A stretch of 64,000 bases of DNA from Piromyces finnis finn (GCA_002104945.1 MCFH01000041.1:310001-374000), one strand, 5' to 3'. Shown: positions 42,791 through 62,885, counted from the first letter of the stretch. The notes: generated by a model not told the origin, from the sequence alone. Numbers and translations: made by a program.

Positions 42791-45700
42791 ATGGAAATAA
42801 AAAATAATTATTTTAAAAAAACCTTGAAATCTTTTCAAGGATTTCTACGAAAACTAATAAACAATAAAATTTATTGTATTATAAATGTTATAATTATTAC
42901 ATTAAACATTATAGCCATGTCTGATGGAAAACATAATAAAAATTATGTTCCAAAAAATATAATTGAATATTTTTTACAATCAGATAATATATTTACAGTT
43001 TTTTTTATTATAGAAAGTTTTTTATCAATAGTAGCTGATGGACTTTATAAATCAGTAAAAAGTTTGTGGGGTTTATTTAATATTTTTATTTTTATATCAA
43101 GTATTTTAACACTTTGTGGTTTAACAAATTTATCACCATTACGACTATGGATCATATTGAAATATCTCTCACGTATACCATGTAAGTTTTTTTTTTTTTT
43201 TTTTTTCCTATTTTGAAATTGAATGAGTTTTGATTAGGAATTTACTAAATATTAATTTATTATATTATATTACATACATATTTTACATAAATAGTATTTA
43301 GCGACATCGAAATGATTTTAAAAGCACTAAAAAAGTCATTTAGTGTATTGAGGGATATTGCTGTATTTGCTATTTTTATTTTCATTTGTTCTGGAATTGT
43401 TGGTGTTTCTCTATGGGGTGGAAAATTTAAATATCGATGTATTAATAGTGAAAATGAATTTTATGATGAGGATTTAGTTTGTTCAATTAACCCAAAATCA
43501 GGTTATCAATGTCCTTACGGCTTCCAATGTACAAAAGTAGACCATAATCCAGCTTATAATACCATGGGATTTGATAATATATTACAAGCATGGTTAACAG
43601 TATTTCAAGTAAATAAAATAATTATATTTAATTTTTTTCAATTCTTTCAATATATTAATATAAAATAAAAACATTATATATAAAGTTTAATTAATTATTA
43701 TTACTAAAATTATTTTTATTTTATTTTATTTATTTTTATATGTCAATTCTTGAAATAAAGATATTAACAACAGAAGGCTGGAGTGGCATAATGGTAAATG
43801 GAATAAATAGTACTAATTCATGGTCAATTATTTATTTCTTAATAATAATTATGCTTGGTAATTGGTTATTATTGCAACTTATTGTCGCTACAGTAACATC
43901 AAATTTAGAAAAATCAATAGAAAATAATGACGTTGATGTAATTGACGAAAGTAATAGCAGCGATATTAAAACAATAACAGAAAGTAGTGAATGTTTAAAT
44001 AAAATAGATAAGCGGAATTCAATGACTGATAGTGAAAAAAGTGTAGTATTATACAATTCAGAAACTAACAATCCAACTATTCCGACAAACCAAACAGTAA
44101 TTGATTCTGATATAAGTGATGAACCAAGTATAAAAACAGTTTCTATTAATGAAATTTCAACCGACAATAATAATCAAGAAATCTTATATACCTCAAATAA
44201 TGCAATTAATAGTTCTATTAATGTTCAAAGCATCAAAAGTAAATCAGAAAAAAGTCAAAGAAAAGTGACAGGTATACGTTCAAGTTTAATAAGAATATTT
44301 AAAAGTATTAAATTTGAATATTTTATTTTATTTGTAACTGCAGTAGATGTAATTGCTTTATGTTCAAATCATAAGGAAGCATCATTAAAATTTTCTAAAA
44401 TAACTCAAACCATTAGTTTAATTTGTACAATAACTTTTGGTGTAGAAATGATATTAAAATTATATGCTTTTGGTATCAAAAAATATATTAGTTCATATTT
44501 CAATATATTTGATGGATTAATTACAATAGCATCCATTGTAGAATTAATTATGCCACATAATCAAGGAATGTTAGTACTAAGAGTTATAAGAGCAATGAGA
44601 ATCTTCAGAATTAGTAAATTTTCTAAAAGTCTAATTGATTTGGCTTTAGTTATAAATGAATCATCTAAACAATTATTATCTTTAGCTGTAATATGGGTTG
44701 TTTCAGTTATTATTTTTAGTGCTATATGTATGCAGATCTTTAGTAATGATATGAATTTTGATGATGGTATTCCAAGAGCTAATTTTGATTCAATGAGAAA
44801 TTCCATTTTATCTGTAATCCAACTCTATACCGTTGAAAATTGGAATGATATTGAAGTTAGTGTTGCTAGAAGCAAAAATAGAGCCTATATTCTTGTACTA
44901 ATTGTTATTATTATTATTGGAGCTTATGTATTGTCACAAATTTTAGTAGCTATTTTGCTTAGTGCTTTTACTGAAAAAATAAAACAAGATATGGAACAGC
45001 TTTTGAAACAATATGTTGGGAAACAAGCAAAGTTTACCATAAAAAGAGCATTTAATGATTTATTAGAAAATGTAAAAGAAAAAAACATTACATTTTATGG
45101 AGATAATGATGATAAATCATATAAAGCTAGTGAGAGTACAAATTTTTTAAAACGCGTAAAGCACTCTTTTATTGATGATAATGATAGTAAGGACCAAAAG
45201 AAAAAGCAAACAGCTCTTGGTAATGTTAAAAAAAATAATTCCGAGCCATCTTTAGTTGAGTTAAATAAAAACTCATCTAATAATATGCTAATTCGTACAT
45301 TAAATAATAAAAGAAGCATATCAAATGCTGATCTATTAAAAAATCTTTCCAAACTTAATACAGATAATAACAATTACCTTGATATGGATGCTGAAATTGC
45401 ATACAACAATATATCTTCAAATAGCAATAGTAATAATAGTAGTAAAGAAAATAGTATTGCTAGTAGTAATACAAAATATGATAAAGATTCTTGTAATTCT
45501 AGTCAACTTCATAGAAGAAATATTAACCAATTCTTTAATGATGACACCACTTCTTTGAATTCTTCTGAATATTCAAGTCCTGTTACTCCTAGTACACCAA
45601 ATACTTTAAGTAGTCCAAGTAGCCCAACAAGTCAGTACAGTGTTGAATACAAGAAAGAAAATATATTTAAACGTTACTATTGCATTTACAGAGAAACACG

Positions 45701-48700
45701 ATTTGTAAAATACGTCCAAGATTTGTCTAAAAATAAAATTTATTTAACATTTATATATTTCTTTATTATTTCCAGTTGCATTTGCCTTATATATGATACA
45801 CCTGTACAAAAAAATCAAGAATTATTAAATATCTTAAGATATCTTGACATATTTTTCTCTGCAGTATTTTTCATTGAATTAATTATTAATTTAATTGCTA
45901 AAGGTGCTATCGTTGAAAAGAAAGCCTACCTGAGAAGCTTTGTAAATTGGATTGATGTAATTGTTATCATAATATCTATTATGAGTGCATTTAAAATAGC
46001 AGATTCCGTACATGTTTTTCGTGTATTAAGAGTATTAAGATTATTCCGTTTAGTAAAATTGCATGAAGGAATGCGTATTGTATTTATGGCTATTTGGAAA
46101 ACAATTCCTTCATTAGCAACTGCATTGATTCCATATCTATTCTTTTTAATTATCACTTCTGCTATGGGTTTATCAATGTTTGTTGGTGAAGGTTGGCAAT
46201 GTAATGATGATTCTGTTAAGAATCATATGGAATGTACAGGTACCTTTTTTGTAGATAATGGTACTTCAACAATAAGTCAAGACAGAGTATGGGAAAGATA
46301 TGAATTATCTTATGATAATATTTTAGATAGTATTCAGACATCTATGGTTATTACTAATCAAGAAGGATGGCCAGATATTATGTATCGTTTTATAGACTCT
46401 GCAGGTATTGATCAACAACCAATAAGGGATAATCGACCTGGAACTTCAGTTTTCTATATACTTTCTGTATTAATTGGTAATTGGATCTTTTTAGCTGTAG
46501 TTACTGGTATTACTTTCGATAATATGAAGCGTAATCAAGAGATTTTAAAAGGTTTACACCATCTTACTGACGGACAAAAAAAATTATTAGATTATATTGC
46601 ATTAATTATTTCTTATAAGCCAAAACCACCACCAGGTACTAAAAAAAGAACGTCATATCAACAAAAACTTTATAACTTTTTTAAAAGCAATATGTATGAA
46701 TATATTGCTTTTGTTGTAGTTTCTATTAATATTATTATTATGGCTATAGCAAGATCAGATGCCACAAAAGCAGAAGATTATATACAAATAATATCAGAAT
46801 ATGTATTTACTGGTATATACATTGTGGAAGTCATTCTTTTAATGTATGCTTATAGACCCAAATACTTCTTTTTTAATTATTGGAATATATTAAATTTGAT
46901 AATTACTGTTTTTGCAATCGTTAGTATTGTATCTCAAGCCTTTTCTCAACCCAATTATCTATCTGTATTAAGATTACTTCGTATTATTCGTTTGGTCAAG
47001 TTTGCTAAAGGTTTAAAAGCGTTGGCGTCTGCAATTATTTTTAATTTTTATCAATTGATGAATGTAACATTCCTTATGTTTATAACTTGCTGCATTTTTG
47101 GTATTATTGGTATGCATTCCTTTGGTGATATTGATTATAATAAAGCAAAAGCATTAAACGAGCATATCAATTTCTCCACTTTTCCAAAAAGTTTATTAAC
47201 AGTATTTGTATTCTCGACAGGTGAGAATTGGCCTGTAGCAATGACAGATTGTAGTGGAAGAAATTTAGTTGGTTGTGATCCAAATGTTGAAAATTGTGGT
47301 GTCTTTTGGGCTCCAGTATATTTCCTTTTGTTAGAAATAATATTTAATTGGATTCTTTTGAACAGTTTCATTGCTATTACTGTGGATACATTCTTAAATG
47401 TATTAAATGATTTAGATGAAATTAATAGGATAGAAACGATAACAAATACATTCCGTCAAATATGGTTAAAATATGATTTGGAAGGAAAAGGTGTAATTGA
47501 ATTTAAAGATATGCTTCACATTTATAGAGACTTCCATATACCCAATAATTATTTATGGGGTAAAAAAAATTCAGGAAAACCAATAAAACCCAGTATTCAA
47601 AAATTATTTAGAAATGTAATTGTATATAACAATAAATGTACTTATGCTGACGCATTAATGAGTATATTAAATTCATGGGTTGGAGAACAGTTACCAGATG
47701 ATATAAAATTAAAATATTGGAGAAAAAGAAATTGGGATAGGGTATATCGTTCAAGTCGTAATAATCCAATGAATAATTCCTTGGTAATGCCAAGTAAGGA
47801 ATATTATAAAAACATTAGAAGTAAAAATCGTGAATTGGAAAGAAAGCATAGAAAAAGCGAACTTTCAAAGTATTCTTCATCTGTTCCAAATTTAAATTCG
47901 AATTCTGAGAGTTCAATATTTTCTTCAAAAAATTATAATAGAAGTGATACTAATTATCATGTAAGACCAAATTTAAGAAGATCTGGAATTCAAAAGGCCA
48001 AAACTACTTCTGATCATAAATACTATAAAAAATCTAAATTATCAGAGATGGAAATTGACATATCAAGTTTACCAATGAAATCGTATGAAGAAACAATGAG
48101 AAATATTCCAAAATATGATGTTCCATTAAGTACTTCATTTTTATCAAATAACAATAAAAGCTCTTTAGTAACCACCCCAACTAGTAGTTCGACACCAAAT
48201 AGTAATAATGATTCAGTAATATCATCTAAAGTATTAAATAAAGGAAAAAGTGTTGAACCTGAAACTATTATGAATATAAAATACCATAATTCCGAAAATG
48301 ATAGTGTTGATAATACCACAAACCAAAATCTTACTTGTAATAGACCTATGTTTAGACTTGATTCCTTTATTAGTATTAATAGTAATATTCAGAGTATTCA
48401 TCATGTTAGAAATGACAGTAGCATCACTACTGATACCAGCATTAATACGGATAGTGATATAAATATAACCAATAGTGTAAGTAAAGAAAATCCACTAATG
48501 GTTGAAGGAAATAACAACAAACTTGCCATAAGAATTAATTCATCTGACTCAAATGCCAGTAGTAGTAACCCACACATTGATATTACTTATGAAATAAATA
48601 AACAAATTCATTCAATTGTTAAAAATAAAAATAATGCAAGTAATAAAATATTTGAAAATAATAATATAAAAAATAATCAAAAAGTATATAGATCATCAGA

Positions 48701-48977
48701 CACTCATTCTTCCGTTGCCTTTGATGATCACTCTCTATATTCAAATTCAAGTGGACATAGAAAGCCTAAAAAATATACTAGAGTATCTAGTTCAATACGT
48801 AATATACTTAAACCTTATAAAAAAGAAGAATATAATGAAGATGATGATTTTGATGTTTCAAAAGACGTATTACAATTTTATGTTGTATATGCAATATATC
48901 GTCTCCAAATTAAATTTAAAAGATCAAGAAAAACTAAAAATGGAAACAAACTTGAAGTCGTAGTAAAAAAGAATTAA
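42791..48977 (+). CDS. Four-domain voltage-gated calcium-channel alpha subunit, copy 1; exons 42791-43181, 43295-43608, 43761-48977
   Basis: Four 6-TM repeats. Pore loops TTEGW, TVENW, NQEGW and TGENW give an EEEE filter. R/K-x-x S4 in DII-DIV, EF-hand-like IWLKYDLEGKGVIEF, and a terminal IQ-like FYVVYAIYRLQIKFKR. Confidence 0.93.
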
Positions 48978-50217
48978 TTTCTTTTTTTTATTTTTATTTT
49001 TATTTTTATTTATTTATTTATATATATATATGTTTTTTTTTTTTTTTTAGTTAATTTAATTTAATTCTATAAGCTTGATATTTGATTATTTTATATTTAT
49101 TATTTATCTAAAACTATTTTATATATTAATCAATTATTAATATAATTAGATTAGTATTTTACAATCTTAATCTTCATCGTCTTTCTTTTTTTTTTTTTTT
49201 TTTTATTATCTTTTAAAAAAAATATAAAATAAAATTAAAAATAAATTATATATAGCAAATAATTATAGATTAAATCAATAAAATCTATAAAAAAAATACT
49301 TTAAAAAAATCTTTTTAAGAATACAATATGTCAAAGTGAGATAAAATATATAAAAACTAATAAGTTCACAAACAAATAAAGACAAAATATATAATTCTAT
49401 AAAATTAAGTATTTTAATCCAATCTAAAAGATGATTCTATTTCTAATAAATACTTCAATATTTAAAATAAGTTAAAATTGATATTTCTTTTTTAATTTTA
49501 TATTTTTCCTTTTAATTTTATTGTTAAAAAAAAAAAAAAAAAATTAATAATAATAATTATAACTATAATTATAGTATTTTTATATTCTTAAAAAAAATTA
49601 GAATATTTTTCAAGTGTTATAAATATATTTTAATCTAGTTTTTTTTTATATAAAGTAATAAATTGTTTGATCTTTTTTGATATTAACACAAAATTCCATT
49701 AGAAAAAAAAAAAAAAAGTTTTATTATGTTGAAGTTTAATAATTTAAAATACGATTAAGTTTTAAAATATATTTAATGTTTAAAAAGTAAAATAAACAAA
49801 TTTAACAAAATAAAGTATTAAAAATTCAAAAAATTTCTAATAGATTTATTTTTTTTTTTTGATTAGACAATAAAGGAATATTGATGTATATATTTTAGTT
49901 ATAGTAAATATAACTTTTTATTATTTTTTTAAAAAAAAAAAATATATTTTCAATATTTCAAAAAATTTATAATAATAATTAGAAAATAAAAAAAAAATAT
50001 TTATATCGACTTGTTAATTTTCAAAAGAAGATAATAGACTATTAAAATTTATATATTAATAGTAGAGTTATTACTTTATTATTAACTAAAATTTGGTCTA
50101 TAATCAAAAATAAAAAAAAAAATAAAATAAACGATATATTGTTTATTTTATAAAAAAACTTTTATGAGCTTTTTTTTTTCTTTTTTTTTTTTTTTATAAA
50201 AGATATATAAAGAAAAA

Positions 50218-53200
50218 ATGGGTACTTTGAAAAAAACTTTTAATGGTATATCAAATTTTTGCTACAAAATTGTAGAAAGCAAATATTTTGTTGCTTTTTC
50301 AATTTTTATGATATTTTTAAATTTATTCATTATAACCAGTGAAGTATCAGATGGAAATGCCGATACTTTTTATGAGTATATAATTTCATCTGATCGAGTA
50401 TTCAGTATATACTTTATATTTGAAGCGGTTATATCCATTATAGCTTGCTTAAATTCTTGGAAACGCTTTAATAATTTTTGGACATATTTTGATGGATTAG
50501 TCATTGTTGTGAATATACTTTTCTTATGCAATCTTCCTAATTTTTCAGCAATCAGATTATGGAGTATATTTAAATATTTGCCAAGAATAAAATGTATCTT
50601 TTCTATTTTTTTTTTTTTTATTTTATATTTTGATCTTCCTTTATATAATTATAATGATATAATAGCTAATATATATTAATAATAATATTTTTTATTAAAT
50701 AATAAATACTTATTAAAAAAAAAATGAAATGCAATGAAAACAATAAAATAAAAAAAAAAAAAAAAATTATAACAGGGTTGCGAGGTATTAATACAATTTT
50801 TAGAGCCCTAAAAAAATCCATTCCCGTTATTAGAGATATTATTATTTTCGTAATATTTATGTTTATTTTTGCAGGTGTTCTTGGTGTTCACATGTACGGT
50901 GGTAAATTGAAATATAGATGTGTTAATGAATATGGAATAATGCTTGATGAGGAACAAATTTGTTCAACTACTCTGTCTTCAGGATATCAATGTCCGGATG
51001 GCTATACCTGTTTAAAAACTAAGGACAATCCATTTTATAATACTATAGGATTTGATAATATACTTACCTCATGCCTTACAATTTTCCAAGTATAATAACA
51101 TTAAATTATTATTTATACTTTAAAATTAAATATAACTATAATAGTATTATATAAAATAATTCTAAATTTAATATTTATATTTTATTTATATTATATACAT
51201 GATACTTCTTTTCAATAAATAAAATGAAAAAGATTATTACAATGGAAGGATGGAGTGATATTCTCTTTATGACATCAGACAGTTCATCATATTTTGGTGT
51301 TATTTTTTATTTAGTTATTATTATTCTTGGTAATTGGTTTATATTACAATTAATTGTTGCTGTTATATCAAATAATTTAATGGATGAAATTGATGAAGAA
51401 GAAGGTGATGATTCAGAGGATAATAACGATAACGTTAAAGAAATTGAATATAAAAACGACAAAGAAAATGAAGTAGCAATTGTAGTTAAAGAAAATAATA
51501 ATAATAATAAAAAAAAAAGAGCTTTATTTTAAAAATAGTAGATAAATTTATTAATTGTAAATTTATGCTAAGATTAAGAAGGTCAAAATTTGTTAATGCT
51601 CTACAGAAGATATTAAACAAAATAATGAATAATGATACATGGGATATGATTATGCTTTTTATTATCATAGCAGATACAATTTCAACATGTTTAATTACAA
51701 AGGATACCACTGTAGAAATGAGAAAAACTATATCAAAAATATCTGATATATGTACAATTATATTTACTGTAGAATTGATATGTAAATTAATTATGTTAAA
51801 TCCAAAAGGATATGTAAAACAGACATTTTTCAATGTAATGGATGGTACATTTACAATATTATCATTTTTAGATCAATTTGTAATCCCATCAGAACAAGGT
51901 TTTTTCATTTTCAGAATTTTAAGATCTTTAAGAGTTTTACGTGTCAGTAAATATTCAAAACAATTCCAATATTTGTTTGAAGTTATTAAAGATTCATCTT
52001 TACATTTATTAAGTTTGATTATTATTTGGTTAATGTCAGTAATTATATTTGCAACTTTTGGTTTTCAACTTTTTGCCGGTTCTATGAATGATTTTGAAGA
52101 AGGTGTTCCAGATGAAAATTTCGATAATATTGGAAATTCAATTCTATCTGTGATCCAACTTTTTACAATGGAAAATTGGAATAATATTGAAGTTTCGGTT
52201 GTTCATGCTAAAGGAATTATTTATGTATTAATTCCAATTATTATTGGTAAGGCATTTATTATTCTAAATATTATATAGAAAAAAAAAATTTTTTTTTTAT
52301 TATAAAATATAATATAATATAATATACTAAAATAAACAAAATATAATTATATTAATATATTCTAATTCATTTATTAATTCACTATTGTTAATTTTGTTAT
52401 AAATATATAAATAGCGATAATCGGATCTTTCTTCCTTTCAAATATTTTAGTTGCTATTATTATTGGTGCTTTTCAGGATAAAATCACAGATGATCAAAAA
52501 TCCACTGATAAATCAAAAGTACCTATTCAAACTTTAAAATTCCTAAAAAGTACTTTAGGAGGTTTTATAGATGTATCAAAAGAAGGTACAAGTAATTTTT
52601 CATTTTCGAGTAGAAAAAAAGTAGAAAATAGAAAATCAGAAATTGATTGTGGGGAAGTTGATAAATCACTTTCTTTGACAGACACTCCTAAATATAAAGA
52701 ACCAAGAGAATTAATGACAAAACAATCATCAGTATTATCTGAAAATCTTAGAATTATTGAAAATGAAATATCTAAAAGTCAAAATTTAGGATCAGATAAT
52801 AAAATTGATCAATTAAATAGTGAAAGAAGAAAAATTATGGAAAATTTAAGTAAAGAAGGAGGTATAAAGGGATTATACTATAAATACAGATTATCTAAAA
52901 TTGTTAAAATATTCCAAAAAATGACGGATAATGTGATATACAATATAGTTATTACTTTAATTATTATTTTTAGTTGTGTAATATTGTATTATGATATTCC
53001 AAGACGTGAGGTAAATAAGGATAAAGTTGTTGTTATACCATACAGCGAAAATACAGAAAACATTATATATAAGTTAAATGTAGCATTTGGTATTTTCTTT
53101 ATATTTGAATTCATTTTTCAAGCTATCGCTCAAGGATTAATTGTGGATTCAAATGCTTATCTGAGAGATCCATTGAATTGGATTGATTTGTTTGTAATTA

Positions 53201-55742
53201 TAATTTCTATTGTTGGGCTATTTGAGTTTGCTGAAAATTTATTAATTCTTAGAGTATTTAGATTGCTGAGAATTGTAAAATTGATTAAGTTAAGTCGCGA
53301 GTTGAGAATTGTTACATTAGCTATATGGAAGACAATTCCTTCGTTGATGACAGCTATAATTCCATTCATGTTTTATTTATTAATTGTTTCTGTTATTGGT
53401 TTATCTTTATATACTGGAAATGGATATACTTGTAATGATCCAAATCCAAATATAATATCAAAAAATGATTGTAATGGTGTTTTCTATAGTTCGGATTGGG
53501 ATAGAGAAATGGATAGATCGATGTGGGGATATTTTGTTGGTTATGATAACTTCTTTGATAGTTTACAAACATCTTTTGTATTATCAAACCAAGAAGGTTG
53601 GCCAGATATTATGTACTATTTTATGGGCTTTAATAGTACAAATGAGATAAGAGAACCTGGAATAAATAAATGGGTATCTATTTATTATATTTTATCAATT
53701 ATTGTTGGTAGTTGGATCTTTTTGGCCGTCGTTACTGGTATTGCATATGATAGTATAAAAAGAAATTCAGATATTTTAAAGGGAATTAATGTAAGTATTT
53801 TTATTGTGTGATTACAATTATTTTTTTAAAAAAAAACATAAAATATTTTAACCCTTTATATCTTTTTTTTTGTTCCTTTAAATATCTAGGATTTGAATAC
53901 TAATCAAAAAAGAATACATGAATATGTTTCATTATTAATTACAAAGAAACCTCAAAAACAAATGCCTAGTAGTCATAATAAATTACGTATAAGCTTGAGA
54001 AAATTTTTTGAATCATCATTATATGATAAAATAATATTTTTATTATTGTCTTAAATATTATGTTACTTTTATTGAATCATGATGACCAAACAGATATTGA
54101 AAGTAAAATTCAAAATGTTTCAGAATATGTATTTCTTGTCGTTTATACGATAGAAGTAGTGTTTTTAATTTATTCTTATGGACCAAAATATTTCTTTAAT
54201 GATAATTGGAGAAATCTTTGTTTAATAATTGTTGTAACATCATTTTTGAATATAATATTTAATGATTCACACTTTAATTCAAGTATTTTTGCAATCATAA
54301 GATTAATTAGAATATTCCGTTTAATAAAATTTGCTCGAGGTATAAGAGCATTAATTCAAGTAATAGCTACGAAATATAAACAACTATTAAACATTTTTAT
54401 AGTTAAGTATATGTATATCTATTTTAAAGAATAATATTATTTATTTTTAAAATGTATTTAATACAGATATAAAAGTTTATATTTGATATATATTAACTAT
54501 TAAAATATTATATATTTATATATAATATATATTTTCTACTATTTATATCTATAGTTAATGCTTATTGTTATGATTACATATGCTTTCCTTGGATGCTACT
54601 ATTTCGGAGATATCAATTTTGAAAATACTGATATATTAAATAAACATTTGAATTTCTCAACTTTCCCAAAAAGTTTATTATCTGTATTTATTTTTACAAC
54701 TGGTGAAAATTGGCCTATAGCTATGGCTGATTGTGTTGGTAGAACACTTAGATTCTGTACAGGTGGTGACAAAGAGAATTGTGGAAATTTATTTTCACCA
54801 TTTTACTTTATTTCTTTACAAATTATTATTAATTGGATTTTGTTAAATAGTTTTATTGCTATTATTGTTGATTCATTTGTTATGTTCCTTCAAGAACACG
54901 ACGAAATTAATCGTATGGAATTAATTAAAAAGAGTTTTTCAGATTCTTGGAATAATTTAGATGTAGGAAGAAAAGGTTTCCTGCAATTTAAAGATTTTGT
55001 AAAGATGTATGAAGAAATGAAGGTTCCAAAAGATTTTGAATGGAGTAGCAGAAAACTTAAATTCTTTAAAACAAAACCACCAATTTCATATTTATTTAAA
55101 AATTTAAAAGTCTATTATAATTATTGTACTTACACTGACGCATTATTCTGTATAACAAGTTTCTGGGTTAATGACGATTTACCATTAAATGTACGAAATA
55201 CTTTATGGGAATACAATGGATGGAATAAAATAATAAAAAAGAAATTATTTATTCAAGGTGAAAAAGTTACTTTTTCAAATAAAAATGGAGCGATACCTTT
55301 AAAAGAAATTAGTTTTGGAGCTGTATATGGAATATATTTATTACAGAAAAGGTATAAAAAAACTAAAAGTATTGATATGCTTTCAAATAAAGGTATGAAA
55401 AATTGTATTACTAATAAAGATAATTTTAGTAAAGAAGATATTACAGAAGGAGGTAAATGCAGGAGTGTTAAAAGTGCAATAATAGATGAAGACGAATTTG
55501 ATATTAATAACAATAAAGGAAATAATATTAATAGTAATGACATCATAAATTATAACAATAATGAAAATAATGGAAGTGTAGAAACCGTTGGAAGTGGGGA
55601 TGAATATTTTGATGCATTATCAAAAAGTAATATTAATATTAGTAAAAACCGTGAAAGCTTGAATGTTAAAGATATAAAAGCAAATAATATCAGAGTTAAT
55701 AGTTCTAATGAGAATCCAAAAATTGAAAATATCAATAATTGA
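50218..55742 (+). CDS. Four-domain voltage-gated calcium-channel alpha subunit, copy 2 (tandem paralog); 5 introns; two apparent -1 frameshifts in homopolymers (possible pseudogene or assembly error)
   Basis: Pore loops TMEGW, TMENW, NQEGW and TGENW (EEEE). Introns at 50594-50775, 51090-51232, 52247-52414, 53791-53889 and 54402-54554. The frame breaks at A10 (51509-51518) and T5 (54037-54041). Confidence 0.88.
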
Positions 55743-55987
55743 TAAGTAATTGCAATACAAGTAATAATATTAAATGATAATACAATTAAAACCAATTTAA
55801 GCATTAACAATAAATACTAAAAATATTTACATTAATAATAATGCAATACAATTATTACAATAAGACTATAAATATTAATTTTAAAACTATATTAAATAAT
55901 AAATATAAGGTATCTTACTCTAGACCAAAAGTGATATTTTTTTTTTAATATTTTTTTCTTTATTAAATAAAAATAAATTTTCCTATT

Positions 55988-56236: not shown

Positions 56237-57588
56237 TTAATCTTCAGAATAATCTTTTCTTTGTCTATGAAATTCCATTTTATCTATTGTATCTTCATCT
56301 TCAGAATCAGATAACGAAGTATCCATAACTCTATACTTGTCTTTTTCTTCCTCTTTTGATTATGAATAATAATATGATTTCATGAAATTTGTGATATTTT
56401 TAATAATTGATATAAATTTTAAAAAATAGTTTAATAGATTAAAAAAAGAAAAAAAAAAAAAAAAGATTTAAAAAATTTTTAAAATCTTACGTGAAACTCT
56501 TATATCAGGATTTGATTCTTCGTAATTTTCCATTTCGATATCTCTCGGAGTTTCTACAAGATATTACAGATAATAAATTAATAAAATAATTACATTTTTT
56601 TGTTTAATTTTAATTATATTTTTTATACCTTGTAATTCCACACTAGGCGCAAACTCAGTATGCCTTAGATTTTCTATTATTCTTTCTCTTTTTTTATTTT
56701 ATTTATTTTATTTTTCGTTTTCGTTTTATTTTTTTTTTAGTTTTGTAAAGAAAATAAAGTTAATTGATATATTCATATAGTATTATTATTTTAAGTTATA
56801 TAAATATAAATATAAATATACTTTATTTTTTCTAAATAGTCTCTTGAATTTAAATTCTTTGCTGTGCTACTTGCTTTAATATCTAACTCATTATCTGGTT
56901 CGTAATATTTTATGTAATCATTATCAGGTATTTCTATTTTATGTTTATATAAATTTAATAATAAATAAAAAAAAAATGTATAATATTTTTATTATCTTAG
57001 TTTTATTAATTGTTTAAAAATATAATTTTTATTGAAAATATTGTTAGTTATTGATTTACTTAGTGGTAATTCTTCTCCTAATGCAACTGCTGTTTCATGT
57101 GTCCATGTTCTTGCTGTGTTTCTTACTGTGTAACCGCCACCTCCAAGTAGAAGTAAGGGTAGATTAAAGGATTTCACATATTCAACACATTTTGCATGTC
57201 CTTTCTATAATACAATATATTTTTTATAGTGAGTGACCATAATTTAGCAATAATATATTTCAATAAATAATAATAATAAAAAAAAAAGTGACAACTACCA
57301 TAGATAAATTGAAAACTCCCAAACGATCTCCATTGATTGAGTCCGCACCGCATTGTAAAACAACAGCACCTGGTCTATACCATTCCATGACATGCTTTAT
57401 AATCTATTTTTTTTAATATATTAGTATACGTTATTTATTGAGAATAATTAACCTTTTATTAATTAAAAATATTATATACTAACAGGCATGAAAAGAGAAT
57501 GATAAGATTCATCATCTATACCATCTTTATTTATTTATATATAATGATAAAATAATTAGTATTTCATTTTCTATTCTTTATATATATA

Positions 57589-57643
<55 letters not shown>

Positions 57644-59297
57644 TTGCTATTTTGATGTGGAATAATTTAATATTAAGATTTACCTTTTAATGGGACATTA
57701 ACTGCATGATATTTTCCTAAATTTGACCCAATATCCTTTATGAAAAACAATTTCATTAAAATCTATTAATTTCTATTAAAAGGCTTGTATCATATATTAC
57801 ATTATAGTTTCCTGTTCCTGGGAAGAATTGTCCATACTTATGAAAAGATACAGTCATTACTCTATTTGTTGCATAAAAGGCTTCCTATTTAATTTAATTT
57901 TAAAAATCAATATTTATTATTAATTATTATTTTATATTTTTATTATTAAAAACAAATAAATAATAAATAAATAAATATATAGATAATAATAATAATAATA
58001 ATTTTAAAATTCTTACCTCAACACCATCCCCATGATGAAGATCAATATCAATATATAATACTCTTTTATGATATTTTAATAATTCTAAGATACCAAGAAC
58101 AATATCATTAACATAACAAAATCCCGATGATTCTGCTTTTTTAGCGTGATGTAATCCACCTGCCCAATTAATACATATATCAGATTCACCTCTATTTAAC
58201 TTATTTGCTGCCGCTTTTAGTTAAATAAAAATTATAATTTTATGTTAAAAACAAAACAAGAACAAAAAAATAAAAAAAATAAAAAACCGGTATAAAATTA
58301 CTAATTTAAATATATATATTACACATTGAACCACCAGCTGATATAGATGAAAATTCATATAAACCATCAAATACGGGACAATCTTCACCAACATTATCTA
58401 ATAGTAAATATATTTAAAAAAAAATTAATTTTTGTTTATTCTATTTTCTAATTATTATTATTATTATTGTTATTGTTATTATTATTATATATTTTTAAAA
58501 TTATTCAGAAATAAATAAAATTTTTGTAAATTACATTTTACTTGTAAACGTTCATAATGGTCACAATGTTCAGGTGTAATTTTTTGTAAAAAATTAATAT
58601 ATTCTTCTGTATGAAAATGAGCCATTTCTTTTGAAGTTGCTTTTATAGGTCTCTATAATATAAATTAATAATTTAAAAAATATTCATTATAATATTTTTT
58701 ATTAATCTTATTATTTATCTAATTTGAAATTTCTTTATTAAAATAATAATTAATATATATTTTTCTTACATATATATCTAATTTATTATATAAACCATAT
58801 TCCAATATTAAGTCATGAGTCATTCTTATTCTTAATGGCTAAAAAAAGTAAATAATTATAAAAAAAATAGATAAAAAAAACATTCAATTCAGTAAATGTT
58901 TACATAAGTGTGAATTAGGATATATTTTTGAATGTTAATAAATTTATCATTAACCTTCATTGGATGATGTGGTGCAAATTGAAAATTTCCTACTTCCGCT
59001 TTATTTTTTATTAATTAAAAAAGAATAAAATTAATAATTAATGAATAAAGAATATATACATTCATTAAAATATTATTGAAATAAAAAGTGTACTATAATT
59101 TAACATAAGAATAAACTATAACAAAAAAAAAAAAAAAAAAAAAAAAAATAGAGTACATAAATTAAAATTACGACTTCCATAATAATAGAAAAAATAGTTA
59201 TATCACAGAATGTGAAAATTAAATAATAAATAAATAAATAAATAAAGACGATATACATACGGTCATAGAAATAAGAAACTTTTTTTTTTGAACTCAT
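56237..59297 (-). CDS. RPD3: Class I histone deacetylase (RPD3/HDAC1-like), many short exons
   Basis: [13 protein letters not shown]|[78 protein letters not shown] and a C-terminal LSDSEDED. Confidence 0.95.
57590..57643. repeat. (TTA)n microsatellite in an RPD3 intron
   Basis: Read directly from the sequence. Confidence 0.93.
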
Positions 59298-60594: not shown

Positions 60595-62885
60595 ATATGG
60601 TCTAAAGAATAATTTCATTAGACCTGAACAATTTGGTTTTCGAAAAAAGGAAGAAAGTATTAGTCTTTTCATTTCAATCCAAGAAATATGCCGTAGACGT
60701 CAATTAGATAATAAAGAGACATATTTGGCCTTTTTAGATCTCAGGAAAGCATACGATTCAGTCCCAATCGGTAATATTCTCCATAAATTAGATTGTTTAG
60801 GAATCCGAGGTAAGAGTCTACAATTTATCAAAAATTTATATTTAACATCTAAGGCTAATGTCAAATTAGATGGACAATTCTCGAAATCTTTTGATGTGAA
60901 GAAAGGAGTCCGTCAAGGATGCCCTCTTTCTCCTATTCTCTTTAATCTCTTTATTAATGATATATTTAGAGAGTGCGAAGATCTCGGAGTCAGTTTAGGT
61001 GACACTCGATGCTGTGGTGGACTTTTTGCAGATGATATAGTTATTTGTGCTCCAACAAGAGGATGCTTAAAAAAGATGCTTAGAAGAGTTAATGAATGGG
61101 CACTGTATAATGAAATGGAATTTGGTATCCAGAAATGTTCAACGATGGTGATTCGTCCTGAATCAATAGAAAATCAGAACAAGAGAGATCCAACATTTTA
61201 CTTAGCAGGACAACCCATTCCAACTACTGATTGCTATACTTATCTTGGTGTTCCATTTGATAAGAATCTGTCCCTTAAACCAGTAATTAAAGCTCTTAAT
61301 AACAAGGTTTTGAAAGGACTTTTCTCAGTCAGTAAATTCTTAAGAAATCCTAATATTCCTATTCCTTTCAAAAAACTAGTACTTAACTCACAAGTAATCA
61401 GCAGAGTTTCATACTTTGCACCATTACTTGGATCCAACAAAGCTAGGTCTAGAATTGCTCAGAAGCATGTTAACAAAGGAATACGATGGGTTGCCGGAGT
61501 TCATAAAGCTGTATCGTTTATATCTTTATACTCTATCTCAAAAGATTTGAATATTCCTCCATTGTCAGCCAAATGTGCGTTAGCTCAGGTTAGATGTTTT
61601 AACAAATGGAAAAACTCAAATTGTATTATCTCACACCTTGTCAATTACATTCCTAAATTTAGAAAATACACGTGGTGCAAATCAAGTAGGACACTTGATA
61701 AAAAACTAAAGAAACATGGAGATGTTAAAGCAGTTAAAAACTTTTATTGGAAAGATCTCAAAGGGAATTCAATCAAAGCGCAATATTATGATGATAATAA
61801 ATTTATTGAAACTAAAGATTTTATTAAATTATGTTATGAGTACCCAGAGTTTGCCTATGGCTTCTACTGGCTATTGAAAGCAAGAAGCGGATACAAGTTG
61901 GATGCTAGAGTTGCCAAAGCTGCCAAATTTGTTGATCCAGTTTGTCCTAACTACTGTCCATGTTGCAAGTGTGGTGTTCAAAGTATTAAACATTGGTTAT
62001 TAGATTGTCCAACATTTAGAGATATCCGTATTAAACATTATGATTCCATAGTTCAGCTATTAAATTTTTTCAGTCAACGTAATTCCAATAGTCCTATCAA
62101 TAATAATGAAATTGTTAATATCAGTAGAGATAGTAATAACATTAATAGTAATAGTAACAATAGTAGTAATAACAATAGTAATAGTAACAATAGTAATAGT
62201 AACAATAGTAATAATAACAATAATAGAAATAATAATATTAGTAATGATAGCAATAGTGAAGATAATAATTCTAATTTAGATAGTAATTTAGTTAATGATA
62301 GTAATAGTTCTAATAATCCGGTGAATATTAATGTGTATGATTATTCTAGTGTGTACAGTAAAATATTTAAATTCCTTCTTGGGGGAAGAAGTTTTAACAA
62401 TATTAATTACAATTCAAGGGAATGGAAAGAACTTTGTAAGCGTCAGATTCAATCTGATACTAACGAAGGAACACCATTCTTGACGGTAACCGCGGAACTT
62501 CTAACCAAAATCATGCCTTTTGCTATTGGCCAGCAATGGTCAATGTTCAAAAGGTTTGAAGCAACATCCAAGAGCGTCAATGCTGAAGAAACAGTAAGAC
62601 AGGCCAGGAGGGCCAGCGCAACCAATGGAGATCATAATTTTGTTCCATGATAAAATTTTGATCTTTGGCTCGGTGTCCCATTGGAAGTCAAATACAATTA
62701 TTATACTTTAGTATGATAGTGGCTTTCTTACTTTAATTAAAATTACTAGAATACATTATACCCAATTTTTATTCATTTGTGTTTATTTAAACATATTTTT
62801 TTTATTTTTATTTATTTTTAATTTTTTATTACATGTATTATAATTTTAATTAAATTAATAATAAAGTGTAAAAATATTTGATGCC

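What the first reader, a model, noticed from the sequence alone, without database searches (positions are those of the whole stretch)
42791..55742. Tandem pair of EEEE-filter four-domain voltage-gated Ca-channel paralogs in a fungus
Seen: two complete 4x6-TM channel genes head to tail. Both have Glu at all four filter positions, an EF-hand-like C-terminal segment and an IQ-like motif, yet their linkers are strongly diverged. Established: EEEE is the signature of animal high-voltage-activated Cav channels, whereas yeasts use the Cch1/NALCN-related channel. Also seen: both copies read ENW in domain II where animal Cav has EDW, so the extra DII aspartate is missing. Inference: a retained Cav-like lineage that expanded locally and subfunctionalised, perhaps for zoospore flagellar or chemotactic Ca signalling.
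Basis: partly seen in the sequence, partly recalled or inferred. Interest (0 to 1): 0.75.

Follow-up and report, generated by a model that had tools for sequence, protein, structure and literature searches.

The report
Tandem Cav-like channels in gut fungus
Two neighbouring genes of the anaerobic gut fungus Piromyces finnis encode four-domain voltage-gated calcium-channel-like proteins of the animal Cav/Nav type rather than the yeast Cch1 type. The pair is old and conserved, and its second copy is broken at two single bases in this assembly, probably by sequencing error.

Summary
The window is Piromyces finnis (Neocallimastigomycota). Two four-domain (4x6 TM) channel genes lie head to tail: gene 1 at 42791-48977 and gene 2 at 50218-55742. 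Aligned to rabbit Cav1.1, both carry Glu at all four filter positions. Both read E-N-W in domain II, so the animal 'beacon' Asp is missing.

Solved-structure searches put them nearest Cav1/Cav2, then Nav/Cav3, and far from NALCN. They are not Cch1/NALCN-type.

The pair is ancient, not a recent copy:
- The two genes are about 40% identical.
- The order gene1-gene2-HDAC-RidA is kept in Anaeromyces and Neocallimastix.
- P. finnis has a second tandem pair elsewhere.
- Gonapodya channels are sister to all four paralogues, which argues for vertical descent.

Differences from animal HVA Cav:
- no AID (beta-subunit site);
- no beacon Asp;
- a charge-poor domain I S4;
- EF-hand and IQ signals only below Pfam thresholds.

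One correction to the finding: gene 2 is not an intact ORF here. It has two 1-base frame breaks, in an A10 run and in or beside a T5 run. The deposited annotation splits it into two models. Orthologue transcripts are continuous there and dN/dS is 0.11-0.22, so assembly error is likelier than decay.

Orthology to animal HVA Cav, ion selectivity and a zoospore role remain untested.

The parts
42791..43181 (+). Gene 1 exon 1: DI S1-S4. The deposited model P0001 starts at 42917 and lacks S1.
   Evidence: The GT donor is at 43182. The N-terminal 42 codons are conserved in the A. robustus orthologue.
43295..43608 (+). Gene 1 exon 2: DI S4-S5 linker, S5 and the first half of the P-loop.
   Evidence: exact mapping of P0001, GT-AG borders. 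(Ion_trans).
43761..48977 (+). Gene 1 exon 3: DI filter through DIV and a long low-complexity C-terminus, stop included.
   Evidence: (Ion_trans, four stretches, E 2e-132).
43139..43177 (+). Gene 1 DI S4, charge-poor (LRLWIILKYLSRI).
47460..47504 (+). Gene 1 EF-hand-like loop after IVS6.
   Evidence: aligns to the Cav C-terminal EF-hand. (EF-hand_1 E 0.012, below cut-off).
48888..48932 (+). Gene 1 IQ-like motif at the extreme C-terminus (YAIYRLQIKFKRSRK).
   Evidence: The C-terminal block is conserved in A. robustus. The motif was found by eye; Pfam gave no IQ match.
50218..50593 (+). Gene 2 exon 1: DI S1-S4.
   Evidence: Orthologues P0010 and P0284 align from residues 1 and 4.
50776..51092 (+). 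Gene 2 exon 2: DI S4-S5, S5 and the first half of the P-loop.
   Evidence: The same intron positions occur in A. robustus and N. californiae.
51233..52246 (+). Gene 2 exon 3: DI filter, I-II linker and DII. It holds frame break (a).
51509..51518 (+). Frame break (a): an A10 run. The upstream and downstream frames differ by one base. The assembly reads as if one base short.
   Evidence: The orthologue exon is continuous there.
52415..53790 (+). Gene 2 exon 4: II-III linker and DIII.
   Evidence: Transcript-like contig L001 is collinear.
53890..54401 (+). Gene 2 exon 5: III-IV linker and DIV S1-S4. It holds frame break (b).
54037..54048 (+). Frame break (b): a T5 run (54037-54041) plus ATTATTG. 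The assembly is one base short against the orthologue transcript.
   Evidence: 1-nt gap in the alignment with L001..
54555..55742 (+). Gene 2 exon 6: DIV S5-S6, EF-hand-like segment (54945-54989), IQ-like motif (55323-55367) and stop.
54402..54554 (+). Gene 2 intron 5. 

Best explanation
These are two members of a four-domain voltage-gated cation-channel clade found in zoosporic fungi. The clade is Cav-like with an EEEE filter. It was inherited vertically and expanded inside Neocallimastigomycota into four paralogues arranged as two tandem pairs. The pair in this window arose by an old tandem duplication that predates the split of Piromyces, Anaeromyces and Neocallimastix.

Shown: the four-domain architecture, the filter residues, the S4 charges, the synteny, the tree, and similarity to Cav/Nav rather than NALCN.

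Inferred mechanism: depolarisation moves the three fully charged S4 sensors (DII-DIV). The pore then opens and conducts Ca2+ through the EEEE ring. The C-terminal EF-hand-like and IQ-like segment gives Ca2+/calmodulin feedback. No Cav-beta subunit is used, because no AID is present.

Because the residue after the filter Glu is Asn in both DII and DIV, Ca2+ over Na+ selectivity is probably weaker than in animal Cav1/2.

The likely cellular role is Ca2+ entry that controls flagellar beating, chemotactic turning or encystment of zoospores. This is inference only.

Gene 2 is most likely intact in the organism, with the two frame breaks being single-base homopolymer under-calls of the assembly.
For: - Architecture: Pfam Ion_trans matches four stretches in gene 1 and every gene 2 exon.
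- Similarity to solved structures: Cav1.2 377, Cav2.x 364-368, Nav 309, Cav3 about 300 and NALCN 141 bits for gene 1. Cav2.1 366, Cav3.2 338, Cav1.2 332, Nav 288 and NALCN 175 for the gene 2 orthologue. Clade profile: Cav2.3 752, Cav1.2 709, Nav1.7 629, Cav3.2 602, NALCN 354.
- Filter: EEEE by alignment to rabbit Cav1.1.
- Voltage sensors: DII-DIV S4 carry 4-5 regularly spaced R/K.
- C-terminus: EF-hand-like and IQ-like segments align with the animal Cav C-terminus.
- Synteny: the order gene1-gene2-HDAC-RidA is the same in N. californiae and P. finnis, and gene1-gene2-HDAC in A. robustus.
- Second tandem pair: P0009 and P0012.
- Tree: fungal clade 100/100; Gonapodya sister 100/99; (p3,p4) 100/100; (gene 1, gene 2) 82/83.
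- Expression in relatives: intron-free contigs L001 and P0284 (1629 aa on a 5.2 kb contig) show the gene 2 orthologue is transcribed as one four-domain message.
- Constraint: dN/dS is 0.11-0.22 between P. finnis gene 2 and L001, including the parts downstream of both breaks.
- Nature of the breaks: both lie in or next to homopolymers, and both are one base short in the same direction.
- Background: loss of Nav/Cav tracks loss of flagella (PMC4685582). Anaerobic-fungus zoospores are chemotactic (PMC7609409).
Against: - No Cav3, Nav, NALCN or Cch1 sequences could be brought into a tree. The position among the big families therefore rests on bit scores only.
- In the trees, a green alga and an unidentified metagenomic eukaryote sit on the animal side of the fungal clade. 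Simple orthology to animal HVA Cav is therefore doubtful.
- AID is absent.
- The beacon Asp is absent in both DII and DIV.
- DI S4 is charge-poor.
- Pfam GPHH, IQ and EF-hand matches are all below the gathering scores.
Gene 2 could therefore be truly frameshifted.
- No expression, localisation or electrophysiology data exist.
Confidence: 0.8

Rival explanations
1. Gene 2 is a recently inactivated pseudogene in this P. finnis strain. On this reading the two single-base frame breaks are real mutations and only gene 1 of the pair works.
For: - There are two independent frame breaks in 4.8 kb of coding sequence, while gene 1 (5.9 kb) has none.
- The second break need not lie in a long homopolymer.
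- The annotators could not build a single model.
- The protein database holds no full-length P. finnis gene 2 protein derived from transcripts.
Against: - No in-frame stop occurs anywhere else in about 1590 codons of a 20% GC genome.
- dN/dS is 0.11-0.22 downstream of both breaks.
- The P. finnis terminal branch is no longer than those of its orthologues (0.16 against 0.14-0.33).
- Both breaks are one base short in the same direction and can sit in the A10 and T5 runs. From memory, that pattern is usual for long-read assemblies.
- Runs guessed to be RNA hold up to 0.82 of the stretch's words, and its exon share is about 0.85.
Confidence: 0.25
2. The channels are not Ca2+-selective. They are mixed Na+/Ca2+ or mainly Na+-conducting voltage-gated channels, because the HFS+1 'beacon' Asp is replaced by Asn in DII and DIV.
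For: - E-N-W in DII and DIV of genes 1 and 2 and of Gonapodya.
- PMC10120453 reports that the beacon Asp is ubiquitous in Ca2+-selective Cav1/2/3.
- The same paper reports that Asp-to-Asn makes animal Cav channels Na+-permeable, and that cnidarian Cav3b with Asn is Na+-permeant.
Against: - The EEEE ring itself binds Ca2+ with high affinity in animal Cav channels (established knowledge).
- Outer-ring acidic residues are present (for example ENWNDIE in DII).
- No measurement exists for any member of this clade.
Confidence: 0.4
3. They are Cch1/NALCN-type voltage-insensitive leak channels, the usual fungal four-domain channel.
For: Fungal four-domain channels described so far are Cch1. DI S4 is charge-poor.
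Against: - NALCN scores are less than half of the Cav scores in three searches.
- The filter is EEEE, whereas Cch1 homologues have three acidic residues (PMC3410928).
- DII-DIV S4 are fully charged.
Confidence: 0.02
4. The genes were acquired horizontally from another gut eukaryote, for example a rumen ciliate or flagellate, rather than retained.
For: - Neocallimastigomycota are known for gene transfer (cited in PMC13358043).
- A protein from the Entosiphon sulcatum transcriptome (P0017) groups next to the fungal clade.
Against: - The free-living fungus Gonapodya is sister to all four paralogues with 100/99 support.
- Introns, composition and synteny are typical of the host genome.
- P0017 sits on a very long branch of 2.26.
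Confidence: 0.03

Closest known systems
Animal high-voltage-activated Ca2+ channels (Cav1/Cav2 alpha-1 subunits)
   Same: - Four 6-TM repeats and an EEEE filter in the same P-loop context (T-x-E-G-W in DI and DIII).
- Charged S4 in DII-DIV.
- A C-terminal EF-hand-like plus IQ-like segment.
- Best sequence match among solved structures.
   Different: - No AID in the I-II linker.
- Asn instead of the beacon Asp after the DII Glu.
- DI S4 is charge-poor.
- The Pfam GPHH and Ca_chan_IQ domains are not detected at threshold.
- The clade lies outside animal Cav1+Cav2 in the trees.
Fungal Cch1 / animal NALCN
   Same: Four-domain pore-loop channel in a fungus. One charge-poor S4.
   Different: - Far lower similarity: 141-175 bits against 330-377 for Cav1/2, and 354 against 752 with the profile.
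- EEEE rather than the three-acidic Cch1 filter or the Lys-containing NALCN filter.
Gonapodya prolifera M427DRAFT_47550 and Gonapodya sp. JEL0774 'T-type calcium channel alpha-1H, partial' (Monoblepharidomycota)
   Same: Sister group of the Neocallimastigomycota paralogues. Same filter set (TMEGW, TTENW, MQEGW, TGENW) and an IQ-like motif.
   Different: A single gene at its locus, not tandem. About 28% identity. The automatic name 'T-type' does not fit: Cav3 has an EEDD filter.
Cnidarian Cav3b and other channels that lack the beacon Asp (PMC10120453)
   Same: Asn at HFS+1 of domain II, which that paper links to Na+ permeability.
   Different: Those are EEDD Cav3 channels. The fungal channels are EEEE and also have Asn in DIV.
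Putative Nav/Cav of Allomyces macrogynus (noted by reciprocal BLAST in PMC4685582)
   Same: A Cav/Nav-type channel in a flagellated fungus. It fits the link between flagella and Nav/Cav retention.
   Different: I could not obtain its sequence here. Whether it belongs to the same clade is untested.

Membership tests
Four-domain voltage-gated cation channel superfamily (Cav/Nav/NALCN/Cch1) | Four homologous repeats of six TM segments, each with a P-loop, in one polypeptide | tested here: met
   Ion_trans matches four stretches in gene 1. Gene 2 exons cover all four repeats and are collinear with the 1539-aa and 1629-aa orthologues.
HVA Cav (Cav1/Cav2) | EEEE high-field-strength site | tested here: met
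   aligned to the four filter Glu of rabbit Cav1.1.
HVA Cav (Cav1/Cav2) | Beacon Asp at HFS+1 of domain II (E-D-W) | tested here: not met
   E-N-W in both genes and in all fungal relatives. Definition from PMC10120453.
HVA Cav (Cav1/Cav2) | Alpha-interaction domain (AID) for Cav-beta in the I-II linker | tested here: not met
   The columns of the animal AID (QQLEEDL..Y..WI) hold no matching motif in any fungal sequence.
HVA Cav (Cav1/Cav2) | C-terminal EF-hand / pre-IQ / IQ module (Pfam GPHH, Ca_chan_IQ) | tested here: inconclusive
   - The segment aligns with the animal module.
- Pfam hits are all below cut-off: EF-hand_1 E 0.012 (gene 1) and 6e-5 (A. robustus gene 2); GPHH 0.22 and 0.038; IQ 0.04.
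- Precomputed Pfam lists no PF16905 or PF08763.
HVA Cav (Cav1/Cav2) | Phylogenetic placement with Cav1/Cav2 to the exclusion of Cav3, Nav and NALCN | not testable with these tools
   - The fungal clade is outside animal Cav1+Cav2.
- No Cav3, Nav, NALCN or Cch1 sequences could be fetched.
- Only bit-score ranking is available.
Cch1/NALCN | Closest similarity to NALCN/Cch1 | tested here: not met
   NALCN scores 141, 175 and 354 bits against 377, 366 and 752 for Cav. No Cch1 chain appeared among the PDB matches.
Cch1/NALCN | Filter with three acidic residues (Cch1), or a Lys in DII/DIII (most NALCN) | tested here: not met
   EEEE. Definitions from PMC3410928 and PMC10120453.
Cch1/NALCN | Arg/Lys-poor S4 segments | tested here: not met
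   Only DI is charge-poor. DII-DIV have 4-5 regularly spaced R/K. Definition from PMC5824947.
LVA Cav (Cav3) | EEDD filter | tested here: not met
   EEEE. Definition.
Nav1/Nav2 | DEKA, DKEA or DEEA filter with a one-residue-shorter DII filter | tested here: not met
   EEEE with no gap in DII. By eye the III-IV linker has no IFM-like triad; this was not tested formally.

The most novel reading that the evidence does not exclude
The Neocallimastigomycota and Gonapodya channels form a separate, undescribed subfamily of four-domain channels in flagellated fungi. Its marks would be an EEEE filter with Asn at HFS+1 in DII and DIV, a degenerate DI sensor and no beta-subunit site. Such a channel could carry a mixed Na+/Ca2+ regenerative current, an action-potential-like signal, in the zoospore or its flagella. 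The four paralogues in two conserved tandem pairs could be split between flagellar and cell-body membranes or between life stages.
Probability: 0.3. Interest if true: 0.65.

Novelty: new member of a known kind. Interest (0 to 1): 0.42.

Why it matters
Papers in the searchable library treat fungal four-domain channels as Cch1 only. One says Cav alpha-1 was lost in fungi (PMC4202318). Another notes that Chytridiomycota lost the Cch1 complex (PMC12412391). A putative Nav/Cav in Allomyces is mentioned only as a BLAST hit (PMC4685582).

A conserved set of four Cav-like genes in culturable anaerobic fungi, with a sister in Gonapodya, gives a concrete handle on how fungal zoospores couple membrane voltage and Ca2+ to flagellar steering. 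It also bears on what the opisthokont ancestor's channel looked like.

The natural Asn at the 'beacon' position is a ready-made test of a current selectivity model.

Practically, the deposited P. finnis annotation needs correcting. Gene 1 lacks its first TM segment. Gene 2 is split in two.

Tried and rejected
- **Reads.** There is therefore no read-level check of splicing, expression or the two frame breaks. Local scripts used 50100-54497 and 54543-55900.
- **Full-family tree.** I wanted a tree with Cav3, Nav, NALCN and Cch1. The three word-based protein searches returned only Cav1, Cav2, fungal and a few protist sequences. PDB sequences cannot be imported into scripts. The tree was left out and replaced by bit-score ranking.
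- **Big representative search.** The protein is not 'open', and that search gives no names or taxa.
- I set max_evalue to 1e-100, so only 5 hits were listed. That used the search poorly.
- **Metagenome scan.** It gave one locus, L001. L001 settles the second frame break in a relative but does not reach the first.
- **Joined model of gene 2.** I used exon references and orthologue proteins (P0010, P0014, P0284) instead.
- **Downstream tblastx.** The comparison of the downstream region with A. robustus was swamped by low-complexity hits. I used it only to see the HDAC match.
- **Unavailable paper.** Cai and Clapham 2012 (PMC4037924), which from memory reports Ca2+ channel families in basal fungi, is not held.
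- **Short intron at break (a).** A 38-47 nt GT-AG intron across 51473-51519 was considered and rejected. The orthologues have one continuous exon there, and the other introns of this gene are 99-182 nt.
- **Transcriptional slippage.** Slippage at A10 as a rescue was considered. It cannot explain the second break.


Full report
**Source and layout.**
The window is very AT-rich, with GC of 14-30% in 2-kb windows. The big ORF at 43740-48977 is 100% identical to a Piromyces finnis protein, P0001 (BCR36DRAFT_358694, on a 489-kb contig). The window is therefore from this anaerobic gut fungus (Neocallimastigomycota).

Two sets of + strand ORFs carry Pfam Ion_trans:
- Gene 1 has three exons (42791-43181, 43295-43608, 43761-48977) with GT-AG introns.
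- Gene 2 has six exons (50218-50593, 50776-51092, 51233-52246, 52415-53790, 53890-54401, 54555-55742).

The gene 2 introns sit at the same places as in the Anaeromyces robustus and Neocallimastix californiae orthologues. The last two junctions are also seen spliced in an intron-free metagenomic contig, L001. The genes are 1240 bp apart.

**Check of the observation.**
I aligned both genes with rabbit Cav1.1 (P0098) and other animal Cav1 proteins. Both place Glu in the columns of the four filter glutamates.
- Gene 1 reads TTEGW, TVENW, NQEGW, TGENW.
- Gene 2 reads TMEGW, TMENW, NQEGW, TGENW.

It holds for every fungal relative and for three non-animal relatives. Domain IV is also E-N-W.

The segment after IVS6 (W..YD..GKG.I.F) aligns with the Cav C-terminal EF-hand. 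Gene 2's VYGIYLLQKRYKK aligns with the animal IQ motif. Gene 1 has a similar motif, YAIYRLQIKFKRSRK, at its very end.

Pfam support for these segments is only sub-threshold:
- EF-hand_1: E 0.012 for gene 1 and 6e-5 for the A. robustus gene 2 orthologue.
- GPHH: 0.22 and 0.038.
- IQ: 0.04 in Gonapodya.

The 42 codons upstream of the deposited start hold DI S1 and are conserved in A. robustus.

**Correction: gene 2 is not an intact ORF in this assembly.**
- Within exon 3 the frame changes inside the A10 run at 51509-51518, in the I-II linker.
- Within exon 5 the frame changes at about 54037-54048, in DIV S1. There the assembly is one base short against the orthologue transcript L001.
- The deposited annotation copes by calling a 297-aa 'gene' for domain I. 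It adds a 1196-aa gene (P0014) that starts at 51625 and jumps the second break with an artificial intron.
- In A. robustus and N. californiae both exons are continuous.
- A 1629-aa orthologue on a 5.2-kb intron-free contig (P0284) covers all four domains in one frame.

Several results favour assembly error over decay:
- Both breaks are one base short in the same direction, and each can be placed in a homopolymer (A10, T5).
- There is no other stop in about 1590 codons.
- dN/dS against L001 is 0.14, 0.22 and 0.11 for three segments, two of them downstream of both breaks.
- The P. finnis terminal branch is not lengthened.

I put about 75% on assembly error. The only other hint is weak. Runs of the same organism, guessed to be RNA, hold 0.54-0.82 of the stretch's sampled words, and exons make up about 0.85 of the stretch.

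**What the proteins are.**
Scores against all solved structures:

| Query | Cav1.2 | Cav2.x | Nav | Cav3 | NALCN |
|---|---|---|---|---|---|
| Gene 1 | 377 | 364-368 | 309 | about 300 | 141 |
| A. robustus gene 2 orthologue | 332 | 366 (Cav2.1) | 288 | 338 (Cav3.2) | 175 |
| Profile of 12 fungal sequences | 709 | 752 (Cav2.3) | 629 (Nav1.7) | 602 (Cav3.2) | 354 |

Two further points agree:
- Cch1 homologues have three acidic filter residues, not four (PMC3410928).
- The S4 segments of DII-DIV carry four or five regularly spaced Arg/Lys. Cch1 and NALCN are Arg/Lys-poor (PMC5824947).

**Differences from animal HVA Cav.**
- The I-II linker has no AID motif, so no Cav-beta site.
- The 'beacon' Asp at HFS+1 is Asn in DII and DIV.
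- PMC10120453 reports this Asp as ubiquitous in Ca2+-selective Cav1/2/3. It also reports that Asp-to-Asn makes such channels Na+-permeable. I therefore expect weaker Ca2+ selectivity. This is an inference.

**History of the pair.**
- The order gene1-gene2-HDAC-RidA is the same in N. californiae and P. finnis, and gene1-gene2-HDAC in A. robustus.
- P. finnis has a second head-to-tail pair, P0009 and P0012, on another contig.
- The careful ML tree used 21 sequences and 1344 columns under LG+C20.
- In that tree the fungal clade has 100/100 support.
- Two Gonapodya proteins (Monoblepharidomycota) are sister to all Neocallimastigomycota paralogues (100/99).
- P0009 and P0012 are sisters (100/100).
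- Genes 1 and 2 are sisters with moderate support (82/83).
- Animal Cav1 and Cav2 form their own clade (100/100).

Each tandem pair therefore arose by its own tandem duplication, before the genera split. Descent within zoosporic fungi is vertical.

The tree has no Cav3, Nav, NALCN or Cch1 sequences, because none could be fetched. It cannot be rooted among the large families. A green alga and an unidentified metagenomic eukaryote sit on the animal side, so orthology with animal HVA Cav is not established. A protein from an Entosiphon sulcatum transcriptome groups next to the fungal clade, but on a very long branch.

**Mechanism.**
Shown: the architecture, the filter, the sensors, the C-terminal motifs and the conservation.

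Inferred:
- It is a depolarisation-activated, Ca2+-permeable channel with calmodulin feedback.
- It has no beta subunit.
- Its Ca2+/Na+ discrimination is reduced.

A role in zoospore flagellar control or chemotaxis is plausible. Retention of Nav/Cav tracks retention of flagella (PMC4685582). Anaerobic-fungus zoospores swim chemotactically to sugars and phenolics (PMC7609409). Nothing here tests it.

**Novelty.**
The proteins are already in public databases as hypothetical, 'EF-hand domain-containing' or 'Ion transport domain-containing' proteins. One Gonapodya protein is auto-named T-type. An expansion of the voltage-gated ion channel superfamily in Neocallimastigomycota has been counted without detail (PMC8778642). 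A putative Nav/Cav in Allomyces has been mentioned.

I found no description of this clade, its filter or its tandem organisation in the searchable literature. The 2018 and 2025 surveys did not include these fungi. I file it as a new member of a known kind, of moderate interest.

A joined, frame-corrected model of gene 2 was neither searched nor folded. Its exons and orthologues were used instead.

Noticed in passing
L004:10001-25886 (P. finnis contig MCFH01000001.1): A second head-to-tail pair of Cav-like four-domain genes (P0009, 2216 aa; P0012, 1811 aa). Their filters read E-A-W in DIII and E-G-W in DIV. The two are sisters, so this is an independent tandem duplication.
   Followed up: partly
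window 42791-42916, 50308-51523 and 51625-55742: There are deposited annotation errors. Gene 1 starts 42 codons too late and loses DI S1. Gene 2 is split into a 297-aa model and a 1196-aa model, with an artificial intron at 53986-54095.
   Followed up: yes
L005:10001-23259 (Gonapodya prolifera KQ965810.1): The single Gonapodya Cav-like gene lies within 5 kb of two ciliary genes, CFAP298 and an IFT122-like WD40 protein. This may be coincidence.
   Followed up: no
P0017 (EukProt EP01012, Entosiphon sulcatum transcriptome): A euglenid-transcriptome protein with an EEEE filter and E-N-W in DII groups next to the fungal clade on a very long branch. It could be contamination, long-branch attraction or a real relative.
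   Followed up: no
window 56468-59297 (- strand): The histone deacetylase model is 407 aa in P. finnis but 438 aa in both A. robustus and N. californiae. This may be another model shortened by an assembly indel.
   Followed up: no
window 60725-62650: A 641-aa ORF lies between HDAC and RidA, where the other two genera have no called gene.
   Followed up: no
The tool says this is a filter that also trips by chance. They were left out of all later searches.
   Followed up: no
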